From Gracilinanus agilis (lineage: Eukaryota), in NCBI RefSeq assembly GCF_016433145.1, contig NC_058131.1, forward strand, positions 30,998,839-31,062,838: a stretch of DNA of 64,000 nucleotides, read 5' to 3'. Below, one piece after another: positions 12,268 through 63,235 of the stretch (within the stretch, counting starts at the first letter, position 1; the number at the start of each line of letters is the position of its first letter). Below the pieces are notes generated by a model that saw only the letters and a list, made by a program, of their open reading frames with translations, did not search any database and was not told where the DNA came from. A program made the position numbers and the translations under genes.

Positions 12268-12299
12268 GTGCCACCTGCCATTGAGTCCAGAACCCTGGA

Positions 12300-12305
12300 G
12301 GAGAG

Positions 12306-12341
<36 letters not shown>

Positions 12342-12378
12342 GACAGAGAGACAGAGACAGAGAGACAGAGACAGAGAG
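12300..12378 (+). repeat. (GA)n/(GACA)n compound microsatellite in the predicted gene A 5' UTR
   Basis: Visible tandem units between the TATA box and the ATG. Confidence 0.9.
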
Positions 12379-12441: not shown

Positions 12442-15400
12442 GTAAGTTTCTTCCAAATCCTACTTTTCCCCTTTCTTTCCCCTCCTCTTATCTTAGAGGA
12501 ATTTCTGGATTCAGCCAGTCATTCTGTGGTCTAAGCTGGGGTCTCTGGGATATGCATAGGGAGGATTTTGAGAGGGGATCAGCCTTTGAGGCTGGCTGCT
12601 CTGGGAATCTGTATGCTTTTCCTGCAGGGAATAGTGGACTTGTCTTAGCTCTTACCCATGATTGGGCTGCTTGAGGTGATGAGAAAGATGAGCTGATCTT
12701 CTCTGGGTTGTTTGAATAGGACCTGGGGGTTGGGGGCAGTCAGGTCAGCTCTTGCATGTCCACTGGGCAAGCTCAGCACAAGGCTGTCTCTCTAAGAAAA
12801 TTTCCAGTTTACCCTGTACAGATGGAGCTCCTTTGTCCTTCGTCATCTGTCTCATTAGATTGAGAGCTCCTTGAGGGCAGAGATTGTTTTTTTCCCTCTT
12901 TCTTGTCTTTCCAGCACTTAGCACAGTGCCTGGCCCAGGTGTTTAATAGATGTCTGTTGATGTGACAGTGAACTCTCTCCCTCCCAGGACAGTTCCTCAG
13001 GATAGAACCACATCCAGCCCGCAGGACTCCAAGGATGGCCCAAGCAGCTCTCATCCTCCTGACTCTGGCCCTGCTGGCCTCCCTCACTGCTATCGTCATT
13101 ATTTGTAAGTTCCTGGGTGGTTCTTGGCTCCACATATGGTTGTATTCCTCACTTCTTGCCCCATCGGGCTCCGAGGGATTGGAATAATTGTCCTGTCCAT
13201 CTCCCTGTCTTCAGGAAAGACGTATGTAGAAGCCATTCTGGATGAGAATATTAGATGATAAGAATGAGAGCGAATATTGGTAACGTCAGCTTCTCATTAT
13301 TGCTGAAAACAAATTCCATCATTCACATTGCCTGGGACCCAGCTAAGATTTGCAAAGTGTTTTGCATTTACTGTTTAATTTGATCCTCAAAACACTGCAG
13401 AGGGTACTGTTATTATGTTCCATTTATAATTGAGAGAGATTAAGTGACTTTTCCAGGGTGACATCACTAACAGAAACAATAAATATCTGGGGTTGGATTT
13501 GAACTCAGGTCTTCCTGTGACCAAGTCTAATGCTCTATCTATGATGCAATCTTCCTTCCTCTATGTGTCTAGAACAGTGCCTGGTACCCAGCTGGCATTC
13601 ACTAAATCCTATTTATTGTAAAGGGAGCTCAGTTTGGGGGCAGCTAGGTAGCATAGTGGATAGAGAGTCAGGGCTAGAGATAGGAGGCTCTGGGTTCAAA
13701 TCTAGTTTCAGACCCTTCTTGGCCGTGTGATCCTGGGCAAGTCATTTAATCCCAATTGCCTAGCCCTTACCACTCTTCTACTTTGGACTTTTCTAAGGTC
13801 ACACACCAATACAAGTATTGATTCTAAGACAGAAGATAAGGTTTTTTTTAAAAAAGAGTCTTGTGTTTGGAGTCAGAAGACTTGGATTCTCCTCTTGGTC
13901 CTACTGATTTTGTATGATTTTGTGGCAAAGATCTGCCTCTTTTTTGGGTCTCAGTTTTCTTATTTGTAAAATAAAAAGTCCAAGTTAGGTAAAAGAAGGA
14001 TAAGACATTTATCAAGTCCTTACGCTATATGAAGCATTATGCTAACCTTTGGGGAGACAAATATATGAAGAAAGACAACCCCTGTTTTCAAGAAACTTAA
14101 ATTCTGATGGGGAGGGGCCACATATATAGGAGAATGATAATGGTCAAAGATGAGAGTTTTGTCTGGGAAATTATAGGGATAACCCTTGAGGTAGTCTCAG
14201 CTCTCCAGCTATGGTTTGAAATTGGATCTTCCATTTAAAAAAAAAATTTTTTTTTATTTTAAACCCTTAACTTCTGTGTATTGACTTATAGGTGGAAGAG
14301 TGGTAAGGGTAGGCAATGGGGGTCAAGTGACTTGCCCAGGGTCACCCAGCTGGAAAGTGTCTGAGGCCGGATTTGAACCCAGGACCTCCCGTCTCTAGGC
14401 CTGACTCTCCATCCACTGAGCTACCCAGCTGCCCCCTAGATGTTCCATTTTTTTGAAGATAACCTGGCAACCCATTCCACTGGCCCAGACCCTTAGCCAG
14501 AAGGGGTTCGATTTGGACCTCAGAGATTTTCTGGTTGATACTCGTTCATTTAGAGGAGGAGGAATGGGGTTCCGGAGCGAGTCAAACATCCGCCAAGTTC
14601 CAACGGTCACTCTAATGGCATTTGTCTCTCTTTGACATCTGATGCGCCCCAACCTTCCCGTCTCCGTCTGTTAGATTTGCAGGTAGAGACGTGCACCAGA
14701 AGAGAGGACACCCAGAGAAAGGCTTGTCTGCATAATGTCACCACCTTGACTTCAGAGACGCGGATGCTAAGGAGCCGCCTGGGGAAACTTAGGGTTCAGA
14801 TGTCAGAGATGGAGGAAACCAGGAGTGGCTTCGGAGGTATCGCAGCATCCAGCGCTGCCATGGAAAGGTCAAAAGACCGCCTGGAGACCACCACGGTCCT
14901 CCCTGTCGGTACCGAGGAGGGGCAGACCAGCACCTCTGCCGTGGACTCACGGACGCTGGAAGGTCCCGTGAAGAAGGACCTCATATTTGGGGGGGTCTCC
15001 GTGGAAAATGGCCTGCAGTTTGGGGGGGTCACGGAGGCCCCTGGAATCCACATGGACGAGGTCTCGGCGACTGTTCAAGGTCAAACAGATGTGAAGACAC
15101 TAAAAGACCTTCTGGAGCTTGTTAGTGCCTCCTACATCGCAGTGAGAGATGAGTATAGTAGGTTCTTGGGGCCTTTGGGATTGGGGACTTTCACGTTTAT
15201 TTTTAACATTTCGGTTCATAACAATAGCTGACAATGGCTTACGAAGGGCTTTTTGAAAGTCATCTTATTTGAATAAATCTTAAGGGGTCTGACTAATATC
15301 AGAATCTTAAACTGAGAGCTGCCAAGGACCTCAGAAGCCTGATAGAGTGCTGGATTTGGTGTTGGGAAGACGCCCGAGTTCAAATCTTGCCTCAAATACT

Positions 15401-24400: not shown

Positions 24401-26785
24401 GACAGAAGGAAGAGGGAAGCTAAATTCCCCTGCTGCCACTGTGACAGTCAAACCTTAGGTCTTAAGATAAGCCCCTTCCTTCTATTACATTCTCTTTCTT
24501 CCCATCATCTGAAATATATTTGATGATACTCAGCTTCATTTCATGAAATTTTTCATTCTTTTTTCTCTTATTTAGTTTTGTGATCCAATAATTCCATTTT
24601 GTCTCAAAGCAGAACTTTCATTTGAGAATAGTTCCAAGTTGTTGTTATTTAAAAAAAAATTTTCCCAACTCAATAACCTTTAAATGACTGAACTGGCGAC
24701 ACAATTCACCGCCTACCCTAGCCATTCAGTGCTGGTGCATGCTGTGACCAGACATGCTTTCTTTATGCCTCAATTGAAGGCATTTAAAAAATCTGATTAT
24801 CTACATCCACAGAGGAGCTCCTGTTCATTCTGGAACAGAAAAGGCAAGGCTCAGGCATGGTATGTTGCCATGGTAACACAATTTCCCTGTTGGCAGCCTA
24901 TCCTTCTGTGTCCTCCGTTGTTGCCTTGGCTGGCCTCCTTTACTTCTTGAATACTTGGACATCTTGTGGCCATAAGTCCCTGACCAGCAGGGCTAGTCTG
25001 CCCTGCTGTCTCCCAATCAGCCATCTGGTCTATAAGTCATTTGCACAAGGTGCCATCTTGGCTGTATCAGGGTAGCTGAGACCAGTCTTCTGAAAAAGAG
25101 TGTCCTCATCAGTCCCTCTGCTGGACCAAGAGGGAAAGAGCAGAGAGTGGAGGCTGGAGGAAGACAGTCATCCTGAAGCATCAATTCAATTCAGTTCACA
25201 TCGACAAGCACATTTTATGCTCCTACTATGTGCTAGGCTACAAAGACAAAGTGAAAAATGGGGAATAAAAAAAAGTCCTCACTTCTCAGGGAAGTTGTGA
25301 GGATCAAATGAGGTAATGTTTGTGAAGCACTTAGCACAGAGCCTGGCACATAGTAGGTGCTACAGAGATGTTCCCTGTCTCTCCCTCCCCATCCTAGGGT
25401 CATACGTGCTGTATGTGTCAGAGAGAGGACAAGATTGCCTGACTCGGAGGCTGAATCAATATTTGCAGCACCATCAGTGCTTAACGAATTTAGTGTTTTG
25501 AAATGATCTCAACCTTCCAGTCTCCCTTCATTTGGCTGCTATTTCCTTAGATCTTCTATCTTTATTCATAGTAAAAATATCAGTATTGGTAAGGTTTGAT
25601 TCATCCATCCATCTCTTGTTGACAAGGAGCTCCAGTTTAGAATGTTGTTATTCAGTTGTGTCTGACTCTACATGACTCCATTTGGGGTTTTCTTGGCAAA
25701 GACACTGGAGTGGTTGACCATTTCCTTCTCCAGTTCATCATACAGATGAGGAAACTGAGCTGAATTAAGCCAGTTATGTAGCATCACAAAGTGAGTGTCT
25801 GAGGCCATGAACTCAGGAAGAAGAGTCTTCCTGACACCAAGTTCAGTGCTCTGTCCACTGCATCAACTAGCTGCCTAATGGCTAAATTAATGTTTGTGGA
25901 TGGTCTGAAGCAGTGGTTCCCAAACTTTCTTGGCCTCCTGCCCCCTTTCCAGAAAAAATATTACTTAGTGCCCTGGAAATTAATTTTTTAAAAATTTTAA
26001 TAGCAATTAATAGGAAAGATAAATGCATCTGTGGCCATCATGCTTCCCTGGATCGCTGCAGCACCCACCAGGGGGCGATAGCGCCCACTTTGGGAATCAC
26101 TGGTCTAAAGGCTAGTTAATTCTCAGCATCATTTGCCTCTCTTTCCATCATCCAGCTGTTACTCCTGAGATAATTTCCAAATTGTTCTTGTTTTCTTGGG
26201 TTACCACAGCCAAAGAATTCCTGTCTAAGTAGCTGGCTTACTTTAGAATTTTAAGGGAACTTAGGGGCTGTCTGGCTTAAACCTCTCATTTTATAGATAC
26301 AGAAACTGAGGCTGAGAGAACAACTGAATAATAACTTGATGGAGGCCACACAGCTAGTAGAAGGCAGAGTTGGGATTTAAGCCTAGCTCCTCTGTCTCTA
26401 CATCAAGAAAATTTCCCAGTGTACCATGATAAGCCCACAGACAGTCTATAGAGGAGTTCTTTCCAGCTTTGTTAAACCTGCCAGAGCTTTGAAGAACCCA
26501 GTGTTCTTCTGGTCTCTGGGCCATCTTGAAGAATCAGAGGACCCTTTACAGCTCACATCACCAGCATGAATTTGTCCTTTAAAAATTTTCTTCTACAGGT
26601 TCTGGACAGGAAGTCAGTCCCAATCCTGGAAGACGGGAGACAACTGTGTGGAGATGCAGTTCAAGGACCAGAATTTATGGAATGAGAGAGACTGTCAAAG
26701 TCTCCTCCAGGGGCTCTGTAAAAAAGCTCTCAAGAGGTTTGAGGAAGACCTTGATGTAGGCAGCCAAAGGACGGAGCTTGACTAG
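12381..26785 (+). CDS. Gene A: langerin (CD207)/CLEC4F-family type II membrane C-type lectin, 6 coding exons, 372 aa, non-canonical CRD
   Basis: Exons 12381-12441, 12988-13104, 14675-15157, 18336-18487, 20644-20762, 26599-26785. All introns are GT-AG with compatible phases (1,1,1,0,2); total 1119 nt is open from ATG to TAG. Architecture is tail/TM/neck/three CRD exons of 152 and 119 nt plus last exon, as in langerin. Short-form CRD SKGWKFYNGNLYYFS...WYEAEKFC...WIGL...C...WNE..C...CK. Confidence 0.92.
12988..13104 (+). CDS. Gene A exon 2, transmembrane exon (...RRTPRMAQAALILLTLALLASLTAIVII)
   Basis: ctcccag acceptor, T|gtaagt donor, 117 nt, phase 1-1; basic residues then a hydrophobic helix. 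Confidence 0.92.
14247..14436 (-). mobile_element. SINE1_Mdo-like SINE in gene A intron 2
   Basis: Reverse-complement copy of the same unit. Confidence 0.85.
14675..15157 (+). CDS. Gene A exon 3, 161-aa neck/stalk
   Basis: tctgttag acceptor, A|gtaggt donor, 483 nt, phase 1-1; lies within ORF 14632-15231; begins YLQ like the neck exons of B (YLR) and C (YLQ). Confidence 0.85.
15950..17230 (+). mobile_element. L2 LINE fragment (RT region and 3' end) in gene A intron 3
   Basis: ORF 15985-16419 reads PDFSAASDIVDHPHLPDTLFSLGFCDIALSKFSSCFSDR, a decayed L2 RT motif (LDLSAAFDTVDH...). Confidence 0.8.
17593..17790 (+). mobile_element. SINE1_Mdo-like SINE
   Basis: Same unit. Confidence 0.85.
18336..18487 (+). 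CDS. Gene A exon 4, CRD part 1 (ILLTFLSKGWKFYNGNLYYFSPKKMSWYEAEKFCVSWGAHLTSMSSVGEK)
   Basis: 152 nt, ctcctcag acceptor, gtcagt donor; langerin-like sequence. Confidence 0.95.
19494..19738 (-). mobile_element. Mar1-like marsupial CORE-SINE (further copies near 22070-22290, 25645-25875, 27620-27845, 53511-53747)
   Basis: CORE domain plus RTE-like tail ...ccatttggagttttctctgcaaagat...gtttgccatttccttctcc. Confidence 0.75.
20644..20762 (+). CDS. Gene A exon 5, CRD part 2 (EFLFRRAKGTPYWIGLSSHGTGGTWHWVDGTPYNEANSR)
   Basis: 119 nt, ttctag acceptor, gtgagt donor; WIGL and WVDGT motifs. Confidence 0.95.
22560..23560. mobile_element. L3/CR1 LINE fragments
   Basis: CR1-type 3' end near 23370-23520 (aaatttcagg...aatgggctgcct...gagctcctc) and antisense ORF2-like sequence upstream. 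Confidence 0.5.
23705..24021. other. Assembly gap (others at 36382-36535, 37588-37748, 42111-42370, 54797-55106)
   Basis: Runs of N. Confidence 1.
25911..26102. mobile_element. 192-bp hAT MITE with 8-bp TSD; second copy in opposite orientation at 61187-61370
   Basis: TIRs cagtggttcccaaa / tttgggaatcactg; TSD gtctgaag / gtctaaag. Confidence 0.85.
26599..26785 (+). CDS. Gene A exon 6, CRD part 3 and C-terminal extension (FWTGSQSQSWKTGDNCVEMQFKDQNLWNERDCQSLLQGLCKKALKRFEEDLDVGSQRTELD*)
   Basis: ttctacag acceptor, phase 2; aligns without gaps to the langerin last exon as recalled (FW...C...WN...C...CK); TAG at 26783-26785. Confidence 0.9.
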
Positions 26786-45154: not shown

Positions 45155-48100
45155 GAGAGAAACTTACACAGATAAGTGACAGTTGACAGGGCAGCAGCCA
45201 GGATGAGAACCAAGAGTGCCAAGACAGTGTGGATGATCCTTGGTTTCCTGTTGGCTGGACAAAAGGAAGAATCCTTAGGAATGTTTCGGAGAATGTCTTT
45301 CAAGAGTGGAGGGCGTTGTGAGGTTCACAGGGGATGTAAAGTATTTGGCAAACATTAAAGTTTCCTATAAAAAGCAATTATTATCACTATTGTTGTTGTC
45401 TCCAGTTTGGGGATAACTTCATTTCCTGAGCCTTCTACTGAGCTCGGGAGCTCAAACAATGTTTTTAGAGCCGGACAGGGGTGTGGTGGTAAATGTTTAA
45501 CAATCCGGCTCTGGTTGTAGCGGTGGGAGGTGTGTGAATGCACACACACACTATTACATCTAATCTACATTATTCAGAATTTCATAAGTCTAGCCAATCA
45601 ACACAGCAATCACTCAAATACTGATTTGTGGGTCTGTGAGGTGTAAATACTCTCAATGAAAATGTAACAACCATCTGCCAAGGGGTTGGAGCTGGTTCTA
45701 GTACAAACTTGGGCAGAGCCTGCCCAGCTTGCAAAGGACCATAAATTCAGGGTAGGAACTGTCTTCAGATCACTTCCTTTACAGATGAGAAAACTGAGTC
45801 CCAGCAAAGGTAAATAACTTAGGGGGCAGCTGGGTAGCTCAGTGGATTGAGAGTCAGGCCTAGAGACGGGAGGTCCTGGGTTCAAATGTGGCCTCAGACA
45901 CTTCCCAGCTGGGTGACCCTGGCCAAGTCACTTGACCCCCATTGCCCACCCTTACCACTCTTCCACCTAGGAGTCAATACACAGAAGTCAAGGGTTTAAA
46001 AAAAAAAAAGGTAAATAACTTCCCCAAGGCCACTCAGATGATGAATGAGAAAGGCTATGTTTGAAGCCAGTTCTCTTTCATTCAAATTTAGTATTATCTC
46101 CACAGGATTATAATCTCTCTCCATCACGTGGACTCCCCTTCATATTTTGCCTGAGCTAAGGCTTCTGGAAACTTCCAGAATTGCTTCTTCCTTTCCACCC
46201 TACCAAATTTCCCTTTTGCACTACTTTTCTGTTTCTCTGTCTCTCTTTCACTCTTTCTCTATCACTGTCTCTCTCTCTCCTCTCTCTTGTCCCTCTCCCC
46301 TTTTCTCTCTTTCTGTCTCTCTCCATCTCTTGCCCTTTTCCCCACTCTTTCTCTGTCTCTCTGTGTGCTCTGTTTGTCTGTCTTCTTATCTCGTTTCCAT
46401 TCTCTCTTCCATGATATGCAATATCTTGGGCCGTGGACAAGGTTGTCATCCATCTCTCCACGGACTTACTCCCCCGCAACTTCAGAGGTTGGCCTCTGCT
46501 AGGGAATGGAGGGACAGTCAGAAAACAATTAAGTCTATAGATTTCCAGATCCAACCCTGTTCATCTCTAGCAAGGACTCCTTTGCAGCCTTGAGACAGAG
46601 AGGCAAAACAATGTAGCTAGAACCATCAACGTAATGGGATCTTCCCCAGGGGAAAGTAAAGGGGAGGAGAGCAGGCAGGTACCCTCAAGATCAAATACCT
46701 GACTCCCTAGGTGACCCTGGGCATGTCTCTGAAGCCCCTCCTCAATATCAGATTATGATCATATCACCTTCTTTCAATAAATTCCATCATAAAAAAAAGG
46801 TAAATTAAAGACATTAGCCAGAAGCCAGGCATTGGGGTCATATGACTTGGGTTCCATTTTTGACCTCAAGTATTGTCTACCTGTTTCTTTGGGTGAGTCT
46901 CCAGAGCCCAGTTCCCTCACCTGTCTTAGAAGGGACTTGGATTATATGACTGCTGAAAATCCTTTTACCTCTTCATCTGTATTTATGAAACCTCTATTGA
47001 GCAACTGATTTAATGAAATAAAATAAAGAGGGGGGTGGTGGTGGATAAAAAGTAAACAGAGCCATAGGTGCCATGACCAGGGTCACCATCCATCTATTCT
47101 ACCTCTCATGTAGTCACTCACATACTCAGCATTCCAGACCTGACCTGTATTGGGGCAGGTGAGAGACAGCAAGGGAACAAGCAATTGGGTTGGAAACCCA
47201 GAACAAGGCTAAGCACTGTCCAGAAAGGAATCCTTTCTAGACTATAGCCATACTCGAATGGAATAGAGCTTAAGGCAAGGGCTCAAGAATTTTTCTAAGT
47301 GCCAACAAAGGAGGTAGAGGTGGTGGAAGCAGGTGGAGATGCTGGAGAGGCATCTGTTGTTGCTGTCTTCCCTCAACTAGGATCCAAGTAATAACACCCA
47401 GGAGAACCAGAGTAGCTTGGTTATGCTTCTCTTAGCAGTTCACTAGAGTCTAGTTATAAGTCCAAGGTCCAGGTCCAGGTCCAGGTTAAGATCAAAGGAA
47501 ATCTAGGCTCTTATTTATTTTCCCCAAGAGGCAAGTCTAGAGCCCATAGGGATACCCAGCCATGAGGGTCTGCTTCCATTAGCAGCTCAAATTTATTTAT
47601 CTATCCATCCATCCATTTTTTCATCCATCCATCCATGGATTCCCTCATTATCACTTACCCCAAACATCAGATGTCTGACCTAAATTGTCAGCATGCTGGT
47701 ATGTACCTGAGGAAAGAAAGAGAACAAAAGATTCAGGGGATTCCTCAATTGAAGCCTAATCCATTTCCAGCAAGAAACTCTTTCTAGCCTAGTTCACGTA
47801 CCACCTCTAGACAATCTCCCTTTTTCTAAAACTCTATTTTTGAAAGCTTTGGGCTTTTTTTTTCACTTGCAGCATAGAGATTTGCATGTAGCTCTTTGTC
47901 CATAAGGGGGAAGCATATATGATAATGATGATGATAAATCATAGTAATAATAGGAGCAGTAATAATGATAACAATAATAGGGATAGGCAAACTGATCTAT
48001 TTTCTCATTTATCCAAAATGGAGGAATTGATGGTCTTTGAGAAGTCATGTAGCTATAGTTCTGTGGTTAGGAAGTCTCAATTAAAGACATCAAAACATGA

Positions 48101-51100: not shown

Positions 51101-53173
51101 ACTTCTGTTATTGTTTGTTAATAAGTAACTGATCATTATCCCTATGGAATCACATTAAACTGGATAATTTTGATCAGAACCAATTAGGGATTAAATTGTT
51201 GATTTAAGATGGACAGGGGTCTGCTAAAATAGGATAGAGGTAAAATTATTTCTCACAGCGGTCATCTATGTCATAGGATTTAATTCCTGGATGATAATTT
51301 CCAGGGTCTTTCAAAGCTCATTTTACACACGACACCCCATCTTTTCTCTTCAAGTCTTTGCATGGGCTGTTCCCGTGCCTGGAATGATCCCCCTCTTAGG
51401 TTCCCTGACTTTATAAAACTCGTATCAAATCCTGCAGAGCAGGACATCTGCCCACCCAGGGTCTGCTTTCTCCTTCTAGTACTTTCCTCTTTGAAATTAC
51501 TTCCCACCTCATTGATATATGTGAGGTATATCTACTGATTTTCCTGTTCATCTCCACCATTAGAATAATAATTGTATTAGTTGGCATTTATATGATGCTT
51601 TAAAGTTTGCAAAAAACATTTCATTTTATCCTCTTAACAACCCTTGGAGGAAGGTGATGTTATCTCCATTTTACAGATAAGGAAATTAAGGTAGACAGAT
51701 GTTAAGTAACTTTCCCAGGATCACAGAGTTAAGAAGTGTCTGTGGCTGGATTTGGACTCAGGTCTTCCTGGCTCTAGGCCCAAGGCTTTATCCACTGTGC
51801 CATCTAGCTGAGCTTTTTGAAGATAGCTGTTTTGGACTTTCTTTATAATCCCAGCCCTCAACTCAATGCCTAGCACACAGTAAACACTTCATAAGTATTT
51901 GTTGACTGACTTAATGATACTGAGAACTGAATCAGATTCCCCAGATGTAGTTTGACCAAGGCCAGATGTGAAGGGTTTCTAATATCCTTATTTATGTTAC
52001 AGCTGAAAGGGACCCCCAAATCATCTAGCCACAGAACTATAGGATACTATATAGGAAGGGACTTTAGAGTCCCTCCGTCTATTGTCTTCTCTCTGCTTCT
52101 CCATTTTACACAAAAAGAAACTGAGGTCCAAAGAAAGTCAATGACTTGTCCAAAGTCACATAATCTACAAGTGGTAGACAAGATTCAAAACCCGGTCTTT
52201 CTACTTTGAACTCAGAGTTCTTTCCATTCCATTCCGAGGTTTTCAAGGCTGCTGATTTCTCATTTATTCAGTCAGAATGTGAATTCTTTCAAGGAACAGT
52301 CTGAGTCTCATCTTTCCCCTTTCTTGAGCCCCTAGTTCTTTTAGAGTATGAACTCTCGGGCAGAGGGTTTGCCTTTGCCTTTCTGTAAATCCTCACTATT
52401 TAGAGGCAAGAGACTTCTGAAAATTGATAAGCCTTAACCCATTTTCACTTATGAGACAGTTTAGCATCATAATGGATGGAGCATTGGACCTGGAGATGAA
52501 GAAGACCCAAGTTTGAATCCAGGCTAAGACTTTTACTAGCTGTGCGACTCTGGGGAAGTCACATCCTCCATTTCCTCATTTATAAAGTGGGAATAATAAT
52601 GGCAGGCATCTCCCAATTGTGAAGATCAGCTGAGATAACATAGAGTGCTTTGCAAACTGTGAGGTACTATATAAACGCTAATTGTTGTTGGCACAGTGCC
52701 TGACATTTATTAGGAACTTAAGAAATATTTACTGACTGACTAGTATAGGGTACAAGGTACATAGGAGGGGAAGAAGAAAGCCTGAGGATCGTGATCAATA
52801 AAATCTCTTTTAACAAATAACTTGCCAAACCTAAGCCCCCTTTCTACCCCTCCCAGCCCTAGGGCTCCTCAACCAAAATGCAGGTCAGTTCCACTGATAG
52901 GGCTCAAATAAGTCAACCTTGAGGATATGTGGTACATTGGAGAGAACAATGAACTTGTCTGATTGAACAGTCAAAATGACTTGCTTTTGAATCCCATTTG
53001 CAAGCCAAGTTGGAATATATGACCCTTACGGACCCTCACAGCTCTAAATCCAGGTTCCTTATTTTCTAGGGACTTTTCTTCTCTAGGCATAGCAGAAAAA
53101 AGGACTTACCTTTTTCAACCAGGGGCAGTTTATTTCCCTGGATCACATTTTCATAGATTCCATCTATGTCCAT
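37422..53173 (-). CDS. Gene B: langerin/CLEC4F-family type II C-type lectin with EPN/WND CRD, 7 coding exons, about 248 aa
   Basis: Exons 53110-53173, 47659-47706, 45168-45254, 41432-41530, 40938-41089, 38266-38384 and about 37599-37422 (5' end in N-gap). GT-AG wherever visible, phases 1,1,1,1,0,2. Confidence 0.9.
38266..38384 (-). CDS. Gene B CRD exon 2 (EFLYKKGNGVWYWNGLNRREDQRTFHWTDGTLFDEAKTK)
   Basis: 119 nt, tctctag acceptor, gtgagt donor; WIGL appears as WNGL. Confidence 0.93.
40938..41089 (-). CDS. Gene B CRD exon 1 (EILVQKLSEMYTVYKGNLYYFSCIEKSWTEAEQFCVSNGSHLTSVTSLEEQ)
   Basis: 152 nt; AEQFCVS..SHLTSVTS..EQ is close to langerin. Confidence 0.95.
41432..41530 (-). CDS. Gene B neck exon, 33 aa (YLRGKTDHTMSALMWKTHFERANASVTALTGQN)
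   Basis: ggttctag acceptor, G|gtgagt donor, 99 nt, phase 1-1; contains an NAS sequon. Confidence 0.85.
42011..42460. repeat. (TTCC)n and (TCC)n microsatellites flanking N-gap 42111-42370
   Basis: Read directly. Confidence 0.9.
43668..43887 (+). mobile_element. SINE1_Mdo-like SINE inserted in an older DNA-transposon-like fragment
   Basis: Full unit with (CAAA)n tail; flanks resemble the element at 45475-45720. Confidence 0.8.
45168..45254 (-). CDS. Gene B transmembrane exon (NRKPRIIHTVLALLVLILAAALSTVTYL)
   Basis: ttccttttgtccag acceptor, T|gtaagt donor, 87 nt; collinear with the gene C TM exon. Confidence 0.9.
45822..46010 (+). mobile_element. SINE1_Mdo-like SINE
   Basis: Full unit with A-tail. 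Confidence 0.85.
47659..47706 (-). CDS. Gene B exon 2, extra cytoplasmic exon (G)TYQHADNLGQTSDVW
   Basis: Strong acceptor (ttctctttctttcctcag) and donor (G|gtaagt); 48 nt; open only in phase 1. Confidence 0.65.
48150..50425 (+). mobile_element. Internally deleted, decayed L1 in gene B intron 1 (antisense to gene B)
   Basis: ORF1 C-terminal-like segment near 48200-48400; ORF2 segments (KLNNLILKNEWIKEEI...TTYQNLW..AKAVL near 48760-48890; C-terminal region 49040-49980); then 3' UTR and A-rich tail. Confidence 0.85.
50500..51280 (+). mobile_element. L3/CR1 ORF2 fragment
   Basis: gggtgattcaattatcc (GDFNYP-like) and KSRAANNKFMASLNDNFMLLNVEQITKG, a CR1 endonuclease-like segment. Confidence 0.7.
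53110..53173 (-). CDS. Gene B exon 1, MDIDGIYENVIQGNKLPLVEK(G)
   Basis: gcaggATGG start context, G|gtaagt donor, 64 nt; YENV matches gene A exon 1. Confidence 0.85.
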
Positions 53174-55191: not shown

Positions 55192-57183
55192 TCTTTGTAA
55201 TTTGAGATCTCTTCCACAAAATAACTAATACAGAAAAATGATTTACATTGTTACATATGTAAACTCTATATCAGATTGTTTACTATCTCAAGGAGGGGGG
55301 ATAGGAGAGATAGTGAGAGAGAGGGAGAGAATTTGGAATTTAAAATATAAAAAAACTGTTAAAATTGTTTTTATATATACTTGAGGAAAAAGTATTTTTT
55401 AAGAGAGAAGGACTTAACTGAAGTTGTAATCTGCTACAGGAGATACAGTCATGGGTTCCGTAAACTGGGCAAAGGAAGCAAGAGTTGAGGACGGTATCAA
55501 GGGATTTTGAGAAGAGAATAAGAAGGCAGCTAAGTGGCTTAGGGAATTGAGAGACAGGCCTAAAGACAGGAGGTCCTGGATTCAAATCTAGCCTCAGGCA
55601 CTTTCTAGCTATGTGACTCTGGGAAAATCACTTAACCCCCATTGCCTAGCCCTTGCCACTCTTCTGCTTTGGAACCAATACACAGTATTGATTCTAAGAT
55701 GGAAGGTGAGGGTTTTATAAAAATGAAAAAAGAAGGGAATGATAGAAGTAGGAGCTCATTGGGAATGTCTTCAGTTTTCTCAAGAAAGCAAGAGGTGAGT
55801 CCCACAGCTGAGTGTGGAAGACTTGAGGAAAGAAGAGATCTGGAATAGCATCTGTGAGGCATGAGATGGTAGCTTAATTAGAAAGGGAAAAGTAGACCTC
55901 TTTGCTGCAGAATGGGACCTAATGAATTAGATTCATTATATACAGTATACATTACTCATCACTATTGCCTGACTTATTCCATCTCTTTCTTGCAGCATGA
56001 GAATAGAGTGGAGTCCTTGGAATAATTCTGGATTGGGGGCAGGCAAAGAATGGCCAATGATATAGTAGGGGTCTGAGGGATCTGAGGATAAGAGGCAAGG
56101 TGGAACTGGCTAGATTAATTAAGAAAGACGATAGGGAGTAGAGGAAAGTGTAGTCAGATCATGAGACATGGTCTTAGAAAGTTCTGAGAGGGTAGAAGTA
56201 TAAGTCTTAATGAGGGCAAATTAATTAAGGAGGGGTGAGGGAGAAAGAGAGGGGAAGAGAGAGAGCAGACAGAGACAGAGAGAGACAGGGAGAGAGAGAG
56301 ATAGAGAGACAGAGACAGATAGAGACATGGGGGGGGGAGAAGGGAAGGAAGGAGGAATGAAGAGAGAGAGAATGATTGGTGGTAACAATCAGATAGAACA
56401 ATTGTGAGCAAAAGTGAGATCCAGGTTGTGACTTGTGATCCATGGCTAAAGTGCAGTGGAAGTGAAGTTTGTGACATCTGAGGAGACTGAGGAAATCAAA
56501 GGGAGATGCTTAAGGGAGAATAAACATGAATGTTGAATGTTCCCATTGTGAAATCAGGAGATGAGAAGAGGAAGACAGCGAAGCAGACACTCTACTCCAG
56601 GAGAAAAGAGGAAGAATGACCTGGCAGTGAGCAGGTAGCAGCCACCAGAATCCATGGTAGTAATAGAATGAGCGTGAAAGAGGATAGACTTCCAAGTGCT
56701 GGAGGGGAAAAGAGAGTCAGGTAGTGGTTTTTCATGACTTTCATCCTTTCAGTCATCTTGAGTCCCAACCTGGTTTTTTCCATTCTTCTCTCTTCTCCAC
56801 CCCCTCCCCAATCAGTTGCCAAATCTTCTCACTGCTACCTCCAAAAGAGTTTTTATAAATTTCACCTTCTTCCTTCCATTCACTTCATTTTGATCTTAGG
56901 CTCACCTCTCATCATTTCTTTTCTGGACTGCTATAGTAAGTTTCTAATTGGTCCCCCTATGTCTTGGGAGGAGGCTGAAGTTCAGGGACCTCAAGTAACT
57001 TGGCCATGGTCACACAGCACATATTATAACAAAGCCCAAATCTCCAAATCTCCTGACTCTGAGACCAGTCCTCTTTTCATCACTCCACAGTGCCCAACAA
57101 GCTGACATCTCATCTCTTTTTACCATAGTAGTATGGTGGCTTCAGAGTCCTAAGAGAGAGAATGGACAGTCTCTAATTCAAGG

Positions 57184-57343: not shown

Positions 57344-60300
57344 GTAAGATCCCAGTTCAGAAGAGCTCCCACCAAACAGGCTGCTCCTGAGAAGAATGAA
57401 TGGAAAGAAGGAGAATCAATGAAAACATGATCCCAAGAAACATGCTGCCTAAGACTGAAAAGGGTAAGGCCTTGGGGGAGATTTGGAGAGTTAACTGAGA
57501 TGCATGGTGAAGAGGATACTTCCAGAAAACCAGGATCAGAGATTTAGATCTAGAAAAGACATTACAATACATCTCTCACTTTTAAGATGAGGAAGTTGAG
57601 GCCTAGAAAAGTTAAATGACTTTCCCAGAGGCACACAGCTAGTAAGTGATTGAGGGTAGGATCCAGAATAAAGAAGTCCTCCAATTTGCCCTGTATATAT
57701 TTTGTGTGTAAAAAATACTTGTATGCTTATTACATTCTCTGTTGGAATGTGAGCCCCTAATGGCAGGGATTCCCTTTTGTCTTTCTTTGTATCCCTAGCA
57801 ATTAGCTCAGTGCCTCTGAAAAGTCCCTTCTAGACCTAAAGTTATGATCTTTGAGTACATCCAAGCAGCAGACATGCTGGGTGGGCTCTGTTTTTGGAAG
57901 CCACGACCCCCAGGCCCCACTAATGACTCTTTTCTCTTTTCCTCATCCAGCCTTCAGGAATCTAATGATCCTGCAAGTTGCCCTGACACTCTTGGTTCTT
58001 GTCCTGGCAACTGCCCTCAAAGTGGTGATTATCCTGTGTAAGTTTTTACCCTACCACCACGTTTTACACCTCTTCTAATCAAACTGGGAGAAAACACTAC
58101 AGAAAATCTTGGGAGGAAACAGAGTCTAGATTGACATAGCAGGGTGGGAGTTGATTAGAAATCCAGGCATGATAGCAGATGCTCTGCTTGCAAAGTCAAA
58201 AAGCGAGTCTGTGTCTTCAAGGAGACGACATTCTTTCAGGAGAAACAACACATACTCTTATGATCATTTACCAAATATATACTGTTTACATGCCATTTCC
58301 TCCCAAGAGAATGTAAAACTGGTGGTTACAGACCTTGCTATGGATGGTGTAGTTGTCAGGTGGCGATTGTCATTGCCCTTTCCTCTCTTTTGCTTTGTCT
58401 TTTGGCATTTAATCAATCGTACTGTTACAACAAACATCTATTTTTTTTAAAAAAATCTGGAGATAATGTAATAATCTTTCAAGTCCCTATAGTCTTCTCT
58501 TCTGATACTTTATAGAGTTGAAATAAATAGAAAGTTAGTACTATAGTCACAGTAGCTCAGAGCCCCCACTTAGGAAAATTGTTAACATTTAGGCAAAGGT
58601 TTGTATCTCTGCCCTAATTTAAATGTATACTTAGCCTCTCTTTGGTTGAGGAAAAATTCAGGCTAGCAGAAACATAGAGATAAAGAAATGGGTGGAGCAT
58701 GTTCCAGAGTCTGTTAATGGACAAACACTGGGAGGAGAAGTTGGGAGAGAAGACCTTTTCTGGGAACTTCCCTTCATCCTCACAAAGGTCAGCACAAAAG
58801 CTTTTAGCCCAATTTGTCTTAAATCCCCTTCTTGATTTCTCCCTTCTCCACCTCAGTTTGAACCTACTTTTTCTTTCTCTTTTCACACCTTGCCCTTGTG
58901 ATGCCCCTTCTTGATGGCTCAGTTCCTGAGCGCCTCCTTCTTCTTTCCTCTCAGTCTCTCTTGAAAACTGTTTGTGTCTCTTCAAAAACTTATGGTCCTG
59001 ACTCAAATCTCCATTCTTGTCAAAGATCTAGATGGCTTCAAATCATTCTTAGGATCCAAAAATAATGTTTATCCCTTTTAGGTACAATTTTCAGGGTTTC
59101 AGTCAGCTCCCAAATCTCTATTCCAGGACATTATCAATGCTTACTGAGTTGGGTCTATCTTCTCCCTGAGACGTCTCTCTTTCTAATGCCACAACTCTTC
59201 GATTCTAGATCTTCAAGGGGGAAGTGACCAACTTGAGAGGGTCAAGGTCTCCAACGAAGCTCTGAAAAGGCAAAATAGTGAGTCAAATCCTCCTCCCCCC
59301 TCACCCTTTGCACTGACCTTCTCCCTCAGGCCCTGACTCCTCCCCTCATTACTGAAGCTTCAGTCTCATCTGGAAAGGTATCCAAGAGAGATGAAGCTTG
59401 TTCCTCTTTTGCTAGCTTTCTCATTGTCCCTCTTCCTGACTACTTCAGAAAAAGGAGGGGACTGAAAAATTCATCATCCTTCAGCCAACAAAAGCTCTTC
59501 CTACCTGACATATCTGGACCCCAAGAGTCTTCTGATCAGATCATAATAATCGAATTCTGTCTCACATTGACCAAGATTTGGTCACTACTCTGTACCTAGA
59601 CCTCCTGAGGGCGAGAGGTAGGGCTGAACCCAGCTCATCTCTGGTCTCTCCCTGTCCTCATTCTTATTCCTCTTTCTTCCCAAGAAATCCTCAGTCAGAG
59701 AATATCACAGTCTTCAGTTGTCTATAATGGGAATCTCTACCACTTTTCCTGTGGCAAAATGTCCTGGGATGATGCTGAGAAGTACTGTGTGTCAAGAGGA
59801 TCTCATCTGACCTCAATAACTTCAGAGAAGGAACAGGTCAGTGCTGTCCTTGGGGTACCCAGAGGTGGGAAGCAGAGATATTAGCAGGCAGGGTGCCCAC
59901 TTTACCTCTTTTCCAGGCAGACCCAGACAGAGTTTCACCCATAGTTAGGGCTTATTGATAACACACCAAGAGATGAAATGCTCAAGGTGAGAGAAGTGGT
60001 TCTGTCTCACTTCCCTTTGTCCTACTTAGACCATAGATGGATTATTATGTTTGACTCTGATTCCTGATTCTGTACATTTTCATTGGCTATCTTCCATTTC
60101 TTAATTAAAGTCTTAATTAAAACCCCACTTTCCACAAGTCTCTCAGTGTTAGTGTCTTCCATCTGATATTACCTCCAACTTATCTTGTATATGTCTTGTG
60201 TGTACATAATTGTTTGCATGTTGCCTCTCCCATTAGGATGTGAGACTCTTGAGGGCAGACTTTGTTTTAGCCTCTCCTTGCATATCCAGTGTTTGGCAAA

Positions 60301-63235
60301 ATGCTTGGCACCTGGAGAATCTAAATAAATGTTTGTTGATTGATTCTCCCTTATAATCCCCACAGCACTATTACAACTTTTCTTTTGTGTCCTAATCCTT
60401 CCCACACCAACCTTCACCCTCTCTTTCATCAGAAGATCAATCTTCTTCCATAATTTACTGAGAACACTCAGAGCCTTCTTCCTGAGATCCATCTTCTTCC
60501 TTCTAACACCTAACTACCCCTCAGTGTTATCCTCCTTCACACTAGTGTTTCATGAAGAGATGGCCTTTCTCTTCACTGTGGCTAATCTTTCTACGTGTAG
60601 TCTTCATTCGATCTCCTCTTACTCCTCTGACAAATTGTTCCTACAATAATCTCTTTGCTCTCCAGTATTCTTTCTCATAATATCTGCTGACACCTTTCCT
60701 ATTGTCTAAAAACACGCCCCTGTCTCCCTCCAGTCTTAAAACCACTTTTCATTGATAGCATCACCTCTGTAGTTATGGTCCCATAGCTTTCCTTCCTTTC
60801 ATAACCATAGTTACAGAAAAAAAATCTATCTTTAGTTGACACTTTTGCCTGCTATCCCCCCACCCCTCTGCTTCTCAACTCCTTATAGTCTGGCTTTCAA
60901 ATAATCATCCAATTGCTCTCTCCAAAGTTTCCAAAGCCCCTGAGTTGCCAAATCTTGTGGCCTTTTCTCAATCTTCATCTTTCTTGATGTTTCTCCATTT
61001 CTTAACACTTTTGACAGCTCTTCTCTTGTACATGTTCTCTCCTTGAGTTTTCTTTTTTTATTATGTTTTCCCAAATACATGTAGATACAATTTTTAGTAA
61101 TTATTTTCTGAAATTTAGTGATCCATGTTCTCTTCCTTCTTTCCTCACTTCCCCTTCCCCAAGACAGCAGACACTATGATGTAGATCAGTGATTCCCAAA
61201 GTGGGCGCCACCACCCCCTGGTAAGTGCTGCAGCGATCCAGGGGGCAGTGATGGCCACAGGTGCATTTATCTTTCCTATTAATTGCTATTAAAATTAAAA
61301 AAATTAATTTCCAGGGGGCTAAGGAATATTTTTTTCTGGAAAGGGGGTGGCAGGCCAAAAAAGTTTGGGATTATACATGTGCTATCATGCAATACATATT
61401 TCTAAGTTTGTCATGTAATGAAAGAAAACACATATCGCTTATAGAAGAAAAAACCCATGAAAGAAATAAAGTTAAGAATAGTATGCTTCAATCTGATTGT
61501 GCCTCCATCACTTCCTTCTGTGATGGTGGATAGACTTTTGCATCATGAGTTCCCTGGATTCTTGCATTGCTAATAATAGATAAGTTATTCACAATTGATC
61601 ATCATTTATAATTGCTGTTATTGTGTACAACAGTCTTCTGGTTCTGCTCACTTCACTTTCATTACTTCCTGTTTTATTATCTGTTCTTATCAGTTTAATA
61701 TCTAATATGCTTCTATCCTCCTTGAATTTTCACATTGCTCTTTTCTTTTGGGGTTCCTCCTAGCTGTTTGGCTGCTTCTTACCAGTTTCTTTTGATGGAC
61801 TGTCATCTATGTTTCTCAAAGTCAGCTTTAGAATTCATTATATCTCTCCCTAATCCTTTCCTTCTTCTTAACTGGTAGAATATAAATTCCTTGAAAACAT
61901 AGATTGTTAGGGGCAGTTAGGTGGCAGTTAGAAAGATACATATCTATCCATATGTGCAGGCACACCTACACATATAAAGGGAAAACATCTGTTTTCTGAA
62001 TAAATATTTATTAAGAGCCTACTATTGGGGGCAGCTGGGTAGCTCAGTGGATGGAGAGCCAGGCCTAGAGACGGGAGGTCCTGGGTTCAAATCTGGCCTC
62101 AGACACTTCCCAGCTGTGTGACTCTGGACAAGTCACTTGACCCCCATTGCCTACTCTTACCTCTCTTCTGCCTTGGAGCCAATACACAGTATTGACTCCA
62201 AGATGGAAGGTGACGGTTTAAAAAAAATAGCCTACTATTTGCCAGCCACTAGGTGGGGGACCCAAGTTAAAAAGGAGGAAATCCTTGCTTTAAAAGAAGC
62301 CTGAGGGCCAGCTAGGTGATGCAGTGGAGAGAGCTAGCCCTGAACACAGGAGGTCCTGGGTTCAAATTTAAACAGAGACACTTCTTTGCTGTGTGATGCT
62401 GGCCAAATCGTTTAACCCCCAGTGCCTAGCCCACACTGCTCTTTTGCCTTGGAATCAATAGGTAGTATTGGTTCTAAGGTAGATGGTAAGGATTAAAAAA
62501 AAGAAGCCTAAATTATATTAGGATATTCTAATGAGTCACAGTGAAAGACAAGATGGCCTGGAAGCCAGGATCAAAACCCAGGACAAATCACTTAACTTTT
62601 CTGTACCCCCAGGAAACCCTTTAACACTTTACATTCCAAAGGAAGTGCTGACCTACATTTGTGCAGGTACTTTCCTCACCTGGGAGTTCTCTTACAATAA
62701 TAAAATTGTAGACCCAGTTTTTATTCTCTATTCTATTTTCTTTTTGTCTTTGCCCATTTTTTACCACAATGCCTGGCAAATGCTTGATAAATGCAAGGCA
62801 ATTAATTTATTAATATGTGTGTATCCATCCACACACCTATAGGCACACACATAAGATGTATAAACATACGTATATAACAAGTACATCTACATTTTTCAGA
62901 GTGAGACTGGCTACATTTCCCCTCTGGGTTCCAGGGGTACCCCTCAGGGGTTGGGATATTTCTTCTCCAATGAAATTAAAGCCATACCCCATTCTGACAT
63001 GTGCTTTAGGGATATCTATGCAAACCAATGAAATAATTACAAACATACCTGTAAGCTGCACATCCATACACAAATTTAAGCATATACCTTCTTAAAAGCA
63101 CTCACTTCTCACTCCGTAGGAATTTATTTATAAAAAGGGTGAAGGTATCTCATTCTGGATTGGACTTGATAGACAGAAGACCTCCAACTGGATCTGGGCA
63201 GACGGGTCCCCGTTTGATGAGTCTCCAAACAAGAC
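57317..63235 (+). CDS. Gene C: langerin/CLEC4F-family type II C-type lectin with a TM lysine; partial (last exon beyond window, 5' end uncertain)
   Basis: Exons 57951-58037, 59209-59277, 59685-59836, 63120-63235, plus a possible upstream exon ending at 57343. GT-AG with compatible phases; closest in sequence to gene B. Confidence 0.88.
57951..58037 (+). CDS. Gene C transmembrane exon (FRNLMILQVALTLLVLVLATALKVVIIL)
   Basis: cctcatccag acceptor, T|gtaagt donor, 87 nt; Lys codon AAA at 58019-58021. Confidence 0.9.
59209..59277 (+). CDS. Gene C neck exon, 23 aa (YLQGGSDQLERVKVSNEALKRQN)
   Basis: gattctag acceptor, A|gtgagt donor, 69 nt; ends LKRQN like the end of the langerin neck. Confidence 0.85.
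59685..59836 (+). CDS. Gene C CRD exon 1 (ILSQRISQSSVVYNGNLYHFSCGKMSWDDAEKYCVSRGSHLTSITSEKEQ)
   Basis: 152 nt, cttcccaag acceptor, gtcagt donor. Confidence 0.95.
60160..61030 (+). mobile_element. L2 fragments in the gene C intron
   Basis: Pyrimidine-rich L2-type sequence, e.g. ttgccaaatcttgtggccttttctcaatcttcatctttcttgat. Confidence 0.6.
62027..62228 (+). mobile_element. SINE1_Mdo-like SINE (an older copy follows at about 62305-62500)
   Basis: Full unit with A-tail. Confidence 0.85.
63120..63235 (+). CDS. Gene C CRD exon 2 (EFIYKKGEGISFWIGLDRQKTSNWIWADGSPFDESPNK)
   Basis: 116 nt (one codon shorter than paralogs), ctccgtag acceptor, gtgagt donor. Confidence 0.93.

What the first reader, a model, noticed from the sequence alone, without database searches (positions are those of the whole stretch)
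57951..58037. Gene C has a transmembrane lysine placed like that of DAP12-coupled receptors
Seen: the TM reads MILQVALTLLVLVLATALKVVIILYL, with Lys (58019-58021) about seven residues from the extracellular end; the collinear helices of A and B are uncharged. Known: NKG2C and CLEC5A use a TM Lys to pair with DAP12. From memory, NKG2C reads roughly MATVLKTIVLI and CLEC5A VVVLKVVG, which should be verified. Inference: gene C is an activating, ITAM-adaptor-coupled langerin-like lectin.
Basis: partly seen in the sequence, partly recalled or inferred. Interest (0 to 1): 0.75.

Follow-up and report, generated by a model that had tools for sequence, protein, structure and literature searches.

The report
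Marsupial langerin-like receptor with membrane lysine
Gene C is an intact marsupial relative of the skin-cell sugar receptor langerin whose membrane anchor holds a lysine kept unchanged in every marsupial copy found, the mark of an immune receptor that signals through a partner such as DAP12; that pairing is inferred, not shown.

Summary
Exon 57951-58037 (+) has canonical splice sites and encodes a 28-residue type II membrane anchor. It contains one Lys (AAA, 58019-58021), followed by seven apolar residues. The collinear residue is Thr in gene A and Ser in gene B.

The Lys is neither a private variant nor a sequencing error. It is present in all 13 copies of a marsupial-only clade of short-necked "CLEC4K-like" genes (nine named species plus this window). 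The codon is AAA in all five DNA copies read. A tree built without the anchor needs a single change of this trait. Both subclades include Monodelphis and australidelphians.

These proteins also lack the N-terminal Tyr motif of their Lys-less relatives. The nearest full-length relative (Monodelphis, 81%) matches human langerin best and keeps EPN/WND.

Lys identity and depth match NKG2C and the published DAP12 rules better than the Arg of Fc-gamma-coupled Dectin-2-family lectins.

Verdict: a probable activating, adaptor-coupled langerin paralogue, a new variant of a known kind. Coupling itself is inferred. No RNA data were found, and the last CRD exon lies outside the window. The scan's only earlier notes are on this same window, none on other DNA.

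The parts
57400..57463 (+). Gene C exon 1. ATG with an in-frame TGA directly upstream. Encodes the cytoplasmic tail MERRRINENMIPRNMLPKTEK plus the first base of the next codon. There is no Tyr: Asn (AAT) sits where gene B has Tyr (TAT).
   Evidence: tblastn with wallaby P0151 gives 71% identity. Splice donor G|gtaagg. Codon alignment with gene B and wallaby.
57951..58037 (+). Gene C exon 2: juxtamembrane FRN plus the membrane anchor (type II signal-anchor).
   Evidence: Splice sites are conserved in wallaby, Dromiciops, koala and Antechinus copies.
58019..58021 (+). Lys45 codon (AAA) inside the anchor. It is invariant in 13 of 13 clade members.
59209..59277 (+). Gene C exon 3: a short neck of 23 residues (LQGGSDQLERVKVSNEALKRQN). 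It is homologous to the last turns of the langerin neck.
   Evidence: Canonical ag| and |gtgagt sites. The same TM-to-short-neck junction appears in annotated models from 8 other marsupials. The homology to the langerin neck is seen.
59685..59836 (+). Gene C exon 4: end of the neck and the first CRD exon.
   Evidence: Pfam Lectin_C. PDB hits to CLEC4F and langerin at E 1e-10 to 1e-12. Splice sites.
63120..63235 (+). Gene C exon 5: second CRD exon (contains WIGL). The donor AC|gtgagt has the same phase as in wallaby. The third CRD exon, which carries the EPN/WND region, is not in the window.
   Evidence: In wallaby the gene spans 8.9 kb, so the last exon is expected beyond base 64000.
45168..45254 (-). 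Gene B membrane-anchor exon, collinear with that of gene C. It has Ser (TCA) at the Lys column and no charge in the core.
   Evidence: blastn 74% identity to the gene C exon. Codon alignment.
13018..13104 (+). Gene A membrane-anchor exon, collinear with that of gene C. It has Thr (ACT) at the Lys column.
53110..53173 (-). Gene B exon 1: MDIDGIYENVIQGNKLPLVEK. It is homologous to gene C exon 1 but keeps the Tyr motif (YENV).

Best explanation
Gene C is the didelphid member of a marsupial-specific clade of langerin paralogues, here called K-type. It encodes a type II protein with four parts: a roughly 25-residue tail with no tyrosine, a 27-residue apolar anchor with a single invariant Lys about eight residues below the outer surface, a short helical neck matching the last turns of the langerin neck, and a langerin-type C-type lectin domain. 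The most likely mechanism is the standard three-helix assembly. The anchor Lys pairs inside the membrane with the two Asp residues of a disulfide-linked signalling dimer. DAP12 (TYROBP) is the most likely partner, with DAP10 or Fc-gamma possible. Ligand binding by the lectin domain would then trigger ITAM/Syk signalling. Shown here: gene structure, the Lys, its conservation, loss of the tail Tyr, and the langerin-like domain. Inferred: the adaptor pairing, which adaptor it is, and activation.
For: The exon and the Lys are real, and all five exons in the window are intact with canonical splice sites. Lys is invariant in 13 of 13 K-type proteins from Dromiciops, wallaby, Petaurus, koala, Antechinus, bilby, Monodelphis, an unnamed source and this window. 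The codon is AAA in five genomes, while synonymous divergence of the exon reaches 0.42-0.60 and dN/dS is 0.16-0.51. A tree built from the ectodomain only puts all Lys-bearing proteins in one starred clade (96/90) and needs one change of the trait. Both subclades contain Monodelphis and australidelphians. The tail has no Tyr, whereas B-type relatives and platypus have DGIYENV and T-type relatives have a juxtamembrane Y-x-I-L. NKG2C has VATVLKTIVLIPFL with Lys 9th from the outer end; gene C has LATALKVVIILYL with Lys 8th. The literature states that DAP12 partners all carry a central Lys, that the DAP12 Asp is at position 9 and DAP12 prefers Lys, and that a polyleucine anchor with a correctly placed basic residue is enough for assembly. 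Hydropathy windows and the AlphaFold helix 19-53 both include the Lys.
Against: There is no biochemical or expression evidence. The presence and co-expression of TYROBP, HCST or FCER1G in this species were not tested. Nineteen apolar residues precede the Lys and could nearly span the bilayer alone, so the Lys could sit close to the outer interface and snorkel. The last CRD exon of gene C is outside the window, so the intactness of the whole gene is not shown. Some lectins couple to adaptors without using their basic residue: Dectin-2 and BDCA-2 do so. The rule is therefore not absolute in either direction.
Confidence: 0.65

Rival explanations
1. The receptor is adaptor-coupled, but the partner is Fc-gamma (FCER1G), as for the other activating group II lectins (Mincle, Dectin-2, DCAR), or DAP10 or CD3-zeta rather than DAP12.
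For: Langerin belongs to the same CTLD group II as the Fc-gamma-coupled Dectin-2 family. The Fc-gamma Asp lies at position 6, not far from a Lys at depth 6-8. DAP10 tolerated Lys in place of the NKG2D Arg.
Against: All Fc-gamma partners with a basic anchor residue use Arg, placed near the outer end. Changing Arg to Lys cut Fc-gamma assembly strongly, and a KIR Lys at position 9 did not bind Fc-gamma. DCAR, Dectin-2 and Mincle carry Arg, not Lys.
Confidence: 0.2
2. The Lys is conserved for a reason other than adaptor pairing. It could snorkel at the outer membrane interface, set the register or tilt of a long anchor, help homo- or hetero-oligomerisation with Ser/Thr-bearing relatives, or act as an ER-retention or turnover signal.
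For: Nineteen apolar residues precede the Lys, so a register with the Lys at the interface is nearly as hydrophobic (2.63 against 2.78). Invariant residues L4, Q8, L11, V15, L18 and L22 form a heptad-like stripe that suggests helix-helix packing independent of the Lys. The neck matches the part of langerin that forms trimers.
Against: The Lys is followed by seven invariant or near-invariant strongly apolar residues that are part of the anchor in all relatives. The change coincides with a tail that has no Tyr motif, the usual signature of activating receptors. No Lys-to-Arg or other substitution is tolerated in 13 copies.
Confidence: 0.2
3. Gene C in this genome is a decaying or unexpressed copy, and the Lys is only inherited from functional relatives.
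For: The third CRD exon is not in the window. No annotated protein identical to gene C was returned by three protein searches. No RNA run holds the stretch.
Against: All five exons present are open, in phase and have canonical splice sites. dN/dS against four other species is 0.25-0.51 in the anchor exon and 0.21-0.33 in CRD exon 1. The divergent arrangement with a B-type gene is also seen upstream of the wallaby and Dromiciops genes.
Confidence: 0.07

Closest known systems
NKG2C (KLRC2)/CD94-DAP12
   Same: Both are type II C-type-lectin-fold receptors with a short tail and a single anchor Lys 8-9 residues below the outer end. The local motifs are similar: A-T-x-L-K-x-[IV]-[VI]-L in both.
   Different: NKG2C has a group V NK-receptor-like domain without a Ca2+/sugar site, pairs with CD94 and lies in the NK gene complex. 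Its Lys is preceded by only about 14 apolar residues. Gene C has a langerin-type group II domain and a coiled-coil neck remnant.
CLEC5A (MDL-1)-DAP12/DAP10
   Same: It is a myeloid type II lectin with a very short tail that signals through DAP12. By established knowledge it uses an anchor Lys.
   Different: It is a group V lectin and not related to langerin. Its anchor sequence could not be verified here.
Langerin (CD207/CLEC4K)
   Same: It is the best sequence and structure match for the lectin domain and the end of the neck. The exon structure and phases are the same. The Monodelphis orthologue keeps EPN and WND.
   Different: Langerin has a roughly 130-residue trimerising neck, a proline-rich WPREPPP tail motif and an uncharged anchor, with a Gln two residues nearer the surface than the Lys column. 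Marsupials have a separate true CD207 (P0254, 331 aa, on another contig), so gene C is a paralogue.
Dectin-2 family activating lectins (Mincle, Dectin-2, DCAR)
   Same: They are group II type II lectins with short motif-less tails and a basic anchor residue, and they are Syk-coupled via an ITAM adaptor.
   Different: They use Arg and Fc-gamma and lie in the Dectin-2 cluster of the NK complex. Gene C uses Lys.
Activating KIR and Ly49 genes derived from inhibitory homologues
   Same: The evolutionary pattern is the same: a close paralogue gains an anchor Lys/Arg and loses the tail Tyr motif (background).
   Different: They belong to a different fold (Ig) or lectin group. For the gene C family, the Lys-less partners carry YENV or Y-x-I-L rather than a canonical ITIM.

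Membership tests
DAP12-coupled activating receptors (Lys / Asp-Asp three-helix assembly) | A single Lys inside the membrane anchor | tested here: met
   AAA at 58019-58021, the only charged residue in a 27-residue apolar stretch.
DAP12-coupled activating receptors (Lys / Asp-Asp three-helix assembly) | Lys depth matches the DAP12 Asp (about position 9 from the outer face) | tested here: met
   The Lys is 8th from the outer end in gene C and 9th in NKG2C. The DAP12 Asp is at position 9 and the Fc-gamma Asp at position 6. The boundary is uncertain by one or two residues.
DAP12-coupled activating receptors (Lys / Asp-Asp three-helix assembly) | Short cytoplasmic tail without signalling motifs | tested here: met
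   The tail is about 25 residues with no Tyr. The Tyr of related B-type tails is replaced by Asn.
DAP12-coupled activating receptors (Lys / Asp-Asp three-helix assembly) | Physical, Lys-dependent association with DAP12, and adaptor-dependent surface expression and signalling | not testable with these tools
   This needs co-expression and co-immunoprecipitation.
DAP12-coupled activating receptors (Lys / Asp-Asp three-helix assembly) | The adaptor gene is present and co-expressed in the same species and cells | not tested
   No adaptor sequence was available by reference, and no RNA run was found.
Langerin (CD207) orthologues | Langerin-type C-type lectin domain | tested here: met
   Gene C CRD exons hit langerin and CLEC4F. 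The 81%-identical P0162 hits langerin at E 5e-44 and superposes at 1.1-1.5 A rmsd over 124 residues.
Langerin (CD207) orthologues | Long heptad-repeat neck (about 130 residues) | tested here: not met
   The neck exon is 69 nt, and only the last turns of the langerin neck are retained.
Langerin (CD207) orthologues | EPN and WND Ca2+/mannose-type site | tested here: inconclusive
   The exon lies outside the window. The site is present in Monodelphis P0162 but altered in australidelphian K-type proteins (QPN, KPN or KPS; WND lost).
Langerin (CD207) orthologues | One-to-one orthology with eutherian CD207 (proline-rich tail motif, position in the tree) | tested here: not met
   A separate 331-residue marsupial CD207 with WPRDPPP exists (P0254). 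K-type proteins form their own clade.
Fc-gamma-coupled Dectin-2 family lectins | Arg in the anchor near the outer end | tested here: not met
   The residue is Lys, not Arg.
Paired activating/inhibitory receptor families | Closely related ectodomains combined with either a charged anchor and no tail motif, or an uncharged anchor and a Tyr motif | tested here: met
   K-type proteins contrast with B-type and T-type proteins in the same clade and the same locus.
Paired activating/inhibitory receptor families | A canonical ITIM ([ILVS]-x-Y-x-x-[ILV]) in the uncharged partner | tested here: inconclusive
   B-type tails have G-I-Y-E-N-V, with Gly at position -2, so this is not a canonical ITIM. The motif fits Y-x-x-hydrophobic and Y-x-N patterns.

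The most novel reading that the evidence does not exclude
Marsupials evolved an 'activating langerin'. This would be a trimer-capable, mannose-type (EPN) lectin that couples through three anchor lysines to DAP12-type dimers. That stoichiometry is unknown among DAP12 partners. It would act as the activating counterpart of the Tyr-motif-bearing B-type and T-type lectins of the same cluster, with ligand sites then diverging quickly in australidelphians under pathogen pressure.
Probability: 0.2. Interest if true: 0.7.

Novelty: new variant of a known kind. Interest (0 to 1): 0.55.

Why it matters
No Syk-coupled receptor of the langerin/CLEC4F branch is listed among the known ones. The known Syk-coupled lectins are Dectin-2-family members using Arg and Fc-gamma, or group V lectins. 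No paper in the searched library describes these marsupial genes, and public annotation only calls them "CLEC4K-like".

If the coupling is real, marsupials would have an independent example of an activating receptor born from an endocytic or regulatory lectin. It would be old enough to be shared by American and Australian lineages and would combine a sugar-binding langerin domain with a DAP12-type anchor.

This makes a simple hypothesis testable: surface rescue and co-precipitation with marsupial adaptors, with a Lys mutant as control. It also bears on how marsupial myeloid or Langerhans-type cells sense glycans. The general principle of paired receptors and Lys-Asp assembly is well known, so this is an interesting new case rather than a new kind of system.

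Tried and rejected
- **PDB search with the anchor peptide:** it returned nothing, so the NKG2C and DAP12 anchors were taken from PMC4141757 instead.
- **Read evidence:** No read-level or splice evidence could therefore be obtained. No letters of 61673-61709 were sent as a query to any search tool afterwards. The whole window served only as the subject of a local tblastn inside run_python.
- **Items not on record:** P0156 was not on record for the look-up of encoding contigs. Papers PMC1899125 and PMC22289 are not held, so the CLEC5A anchor motif and the opossum adaptor genes remain unverified.
- **Idea rejected, decayed neck:** I considered that the short neck exon was a chance splice in a decayed long neck. 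The same junction is annotated in eight other species and the exon maps in four loci.
- **Idea rejected, frameshift:** I considered a frameshift at the CRD exon 2 donor. Wallaby has the same phase.
- **Idea rejected, Gln to Lys:** I considered that the Lys replaces the conserved langerin Gln. Anchored on the exon end, the Gln lies two residues nearer the surface, and the collinear langerin residue is Leu.
- **Idea rejected, start codon:** I considered translation starting at the Met inside the anchor exon. A homologous exon 1 with its own ATG exists at 57400.
- **Representative search:** its top ranks were swamped by multi-domain lectins, and only hit P0039 was useful.

Full report
**1. The observation**

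The + strand at 57951-58037 is a well-formed internal exon, bounded by ...catccag| and T|gtaagt. In the frame set by its neighbours it reads FRNLMILQVALTLLVLVLATALKVVIIL. Lys is AAA at 58019-58021.

After the Lys come VVIILYL and then QGG. The Lys is therefore the eighth residue from the extracellular end of a 27-residue apolar stretch. The best 19-, 21- and 23-residue Kyte-Doolittle windows all contain it.

The collinear exons of gene A (13018-13104, +) and gene B (45168-45254, -) have the same length and phase. They carry Thr and Ser at that column and have no charge in the core.

**2. The gene**

Five exons of gene C lie in the window. All are open, in phase and flanked by canonical splice sites:
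- exon 1, 57400-57463: ATG preceded by an in-frame TGA; encodes MERRRINENMIPRNMLPKTEK
- the anchor exon, 57951-58037
- a 69-nt neck exon, 59209-59277
- CRD exon 1, 59685-59836
- CRD exon 2, 63120-63235

The third CRD exon is not in the window. The wallaby orthologue spans 8.9 kb, so that exon is expected just past base 64000. Gene B is transcribed divergently. Its exon 1 is at 53173-53110 (-), 4.2 kb from the gene C start. B-type genes sit the same way upstream of the wallaby and Dromiciops genes.

**3. Relatives**

A search of protein representatives with CRD exon 1 gave one close single-domain hit, P0039 from Dromiciops. From it and a family profile, the word search returned about 100 langerin-family proteins.

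Thirteen sequences share the gene C architecture: anchor spliced directly to a short neck. They come from Dromiciops, tammar wallaby (2), sugar glider, koala (3), Antechinus, bilby, Monodelphis (2), one unnamed source, and gene C itself. All carry the Lys in the motif A-L-K-V-[VM]-[VI]-[IF]-L. Public annotation calls them "C-type lectin domain family 4 member K-like".

The Lys is absent from every other group retrieved:
- B-type marsupial proteins, which include gene B (Ser, Ala or Pro at that column)
- a small T-type group (Thr)
- a D-type group
- platypus (Ile)
- about 60 eutherian langerins (Leu, with a conserved Gln two residues nearer the surface)
- a true marsupial CD207 (P0254)
- lizard homologues

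**4. Conservation**

I built a maximum-likelihood tree from the ectodomain only, so that the trait's own columns were left out. It puts all Lys-bearing proteins in one starred clade (96/90) and needs one change of the trait. The clade splits into two starred subclades, each containing Monodelphis and australidelphian members. Gene C pairs with Monodelphis P0162 (100/97; 81% identity). The Lys therefore predates the split of American and Australian marsupials.

In five genomic copies the codon is AAA and the splice sites are conserved. Synonymous divergence of the anchor exon between gene C and the australidelphian copies is 0.42-0.60. Its dN/dS is 0.16-0.51, similar to CRD exon 1 at 0.21-0.36. 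Mean pairwise identity is 72% for the anchor exon, 76% for the neck and 66% for CRD exons 1-2.

One caution applies. Paralogues within a species share lineage-specific anchor residues: the koala copies differ at 2 of 28 positions, and the didelphid copies share Val17. Some gene conversion of the 5' exons is therefore likely, and the two subclades are not fully independent witnesses.

**5. The rest of the protein**

The tail is short and has no Tyr. Exon 1 is homologous to that of gene B and of B-type proteins, which begin M-E-L-D-G-I-Y-E-N-V, as does the platypus homologue. At the Tyr codon (TAT in gene B), gene C has AAT (Asn) and wallaby has TCT (Ser). T-type proteins have a juxtamembrane E-K-[IV]-Y-x-I-L where K-type proteins have E-K-A-F-R-K-L.

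The full-length relative P0162 matches the human langerin trimer fragment 3KQG best (E 5e-44, 153 bits, against 106 bits for CLEC4F). The match includes the last turns of the neck. Its AlphaFold model has mean pLDDT 84. It has one helix over residues 19-53, with Lys45 eight residues before the helix end, then a neck helix 57-80 and a CRD with pLDDT above 90. The CRD superposes on langerin CRDs at 1.1-1.5 A over about 124 residues with 50% identity.

P0162 keeps EPN and WND. Australidelphian K-type proteins have QPN, KPN or KPS and have lost WND. For gene C this part is unseen.

**6. Mechanism**

The literature read here states the following:
- All known DAP12 partners have a Lys within the anchor.
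- The interaction is focused on one Lys and two Asp residues.
- A polyleucine anchor with a properly placed basic residue is sufficient for assembly.
- DAP12 favours Lys, with its Asp at position 9. Fc-gamma favours Arg placed near the outer end, with its Asp at position 6.

The NKG2C anchor used for the NMR structure is GIISIVLVATVLKTIVLIPFL, with Lys ninth from the outer end. Gene C has LATALKVVIILYL, with Lys eighth. The activating group II lectins of the Dectin-2 family use Arg or no basic residue, and they use Fc-gamma.

On these grounds the most likely reading is a Lys-dependent assembly with a DAP12-type dimer and ITAM/Syk signalling. I give about 0.65 for adaptor coupling in general and somewhat under 0.5 for DAP12 specifically.

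**7. Rivals**

- *Another adaptor (0.2).* Fc-gamma, DAP10 or CD3-zeta could be the partner instead of DAP12.
- *A non-adaptor role for the Lys (0.2).* Nineteen apolar residues precede it, so a register with the Lys at the interface scores nearly as well (2.63 against 2.78). The invariant stripe L4, Q8, L11, V15, L18, L22 suggests helix packing of its own.
- *A dead copy in this genome (0.07).* The last exon and any transcripts are unseen.

**8. What could not be done**

Those places lie in an intron, were not sent as a query to any search tool afterwards, and the work proceeded beside them. The adaptor genes of this species, the CLEC5A anchor motif and any physical association were not tested.

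**9. Novelty**

No paper in the searched library deals with these genes. The known Syk-coupled lectins do not include a langerin-type receptor. The principle is familiar: an activating paralogue arises by gaining an anchor Lys and losing a tail Tyr. This is therefore a new variant of a known kind, of moderate interest.

Noticed in passing
window 53110-53173 (-); also P0161, P0163-P0169, P0178: Gene B, all B-type marsupial proteins and the platypus homologue start with a conserved acidic Tyr motif, M-E/D-x-D-G-I-Y-E-N-V. It is not a canonical ITIM because position -2 is Gly. It fits Y-x-x-hydrophobic sorting signals and Y-x-N (Grb2-type) motifs, and it loosely resembles hemITAMs. Its function is unknown.
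   Followed up: partly
P0168 (Antechinus), P0251, P0252 (bilby): A third short-necked group (T-type) is sister to the Lys clade. It has Thr at the Lys column, a juxtamembrane E-K-[IV]-Y-x-I-L, and intact EPN and WND. It may be the uncharged counterpart of the K-type genes. No such gene was recognised in this window.
   Followed up: partly
window 57953-58036 and orthologues (alignment): Invariant anchor residues L4, Q8, L11, (V15), L18 and L22 fall on one helix face with heptad-like spacing. They include an invariant Gln in the cytoplasmic third of the anchor. This suggests a conserved helix-helix interface, perhaps trimerisation continuing from the neck.
   Followed up: no
K-type anchor exons of koala, wallaby and Monodelphis: Paralogues within a species share lineage-specific anchor residues, although their lectin domains separated before the species split. 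Koala K1 and K2 differ at 2 of 28 positions, and both didelphid copies have Val17. This hints at gene conversion of the 5' exons.
   Followed up: no
P0254 (bilby, 331 aa) and the D-type proteins P0135, P0165, P0170, P0171, P0175, P0176: A true long-necked CD207 with the WPRDPPP tail motif exists in marsupials. In bilby its longest-contig length equals that of the D-type protein P0175 and differs from that of the K-type proteins, so it appears to lie away from the K/B cluster. The cluster in this window is therefore an extra, marsupial-specific expansion.
   Followed up: partly
window 26600-26725 (+): The last CRD exon of gene A reads FWTGSQSQSW...LWNERDC, so EPN is replaced by QSQ and WND by WNE. 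This agrees with the earlier first-reader note. Gene A sits on a very long branch in the tree.
   Followed up: partly
window 56224-56420 (+), 46207-46415 (-), 12298-12378 (+): GA-rich low-complexity repeats lie about 1-1.6 kb upstream of the anchor exon in genes B and C, and about 0.6-0.7 kb upstream of it in gene A. They may be a shared remnant of the duplicated unit.
   Followed up: no
L002 (Dromiciops), protein P0039 residues 37-56: The Dromiciops model has about 20 extra residues between the anchor and the neck that no other species has. This is probably an annotation artefact from an alternative acceptor, not a real insertion.
   Followed up: no
L001 26130-26192 (wallaby): A second K-type exon 1, 90% identical at protein level, lies about 7 kb downstream of the wallaby K1 gene. 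K1 and a second K-type gene are therefore probably tandem neighbours. A second K-type gene may lie just beyond the end of this window.
   Followed up: no
They lie in the intron between CRD exons 1 and 2 and were left alone.
   Followed up: no
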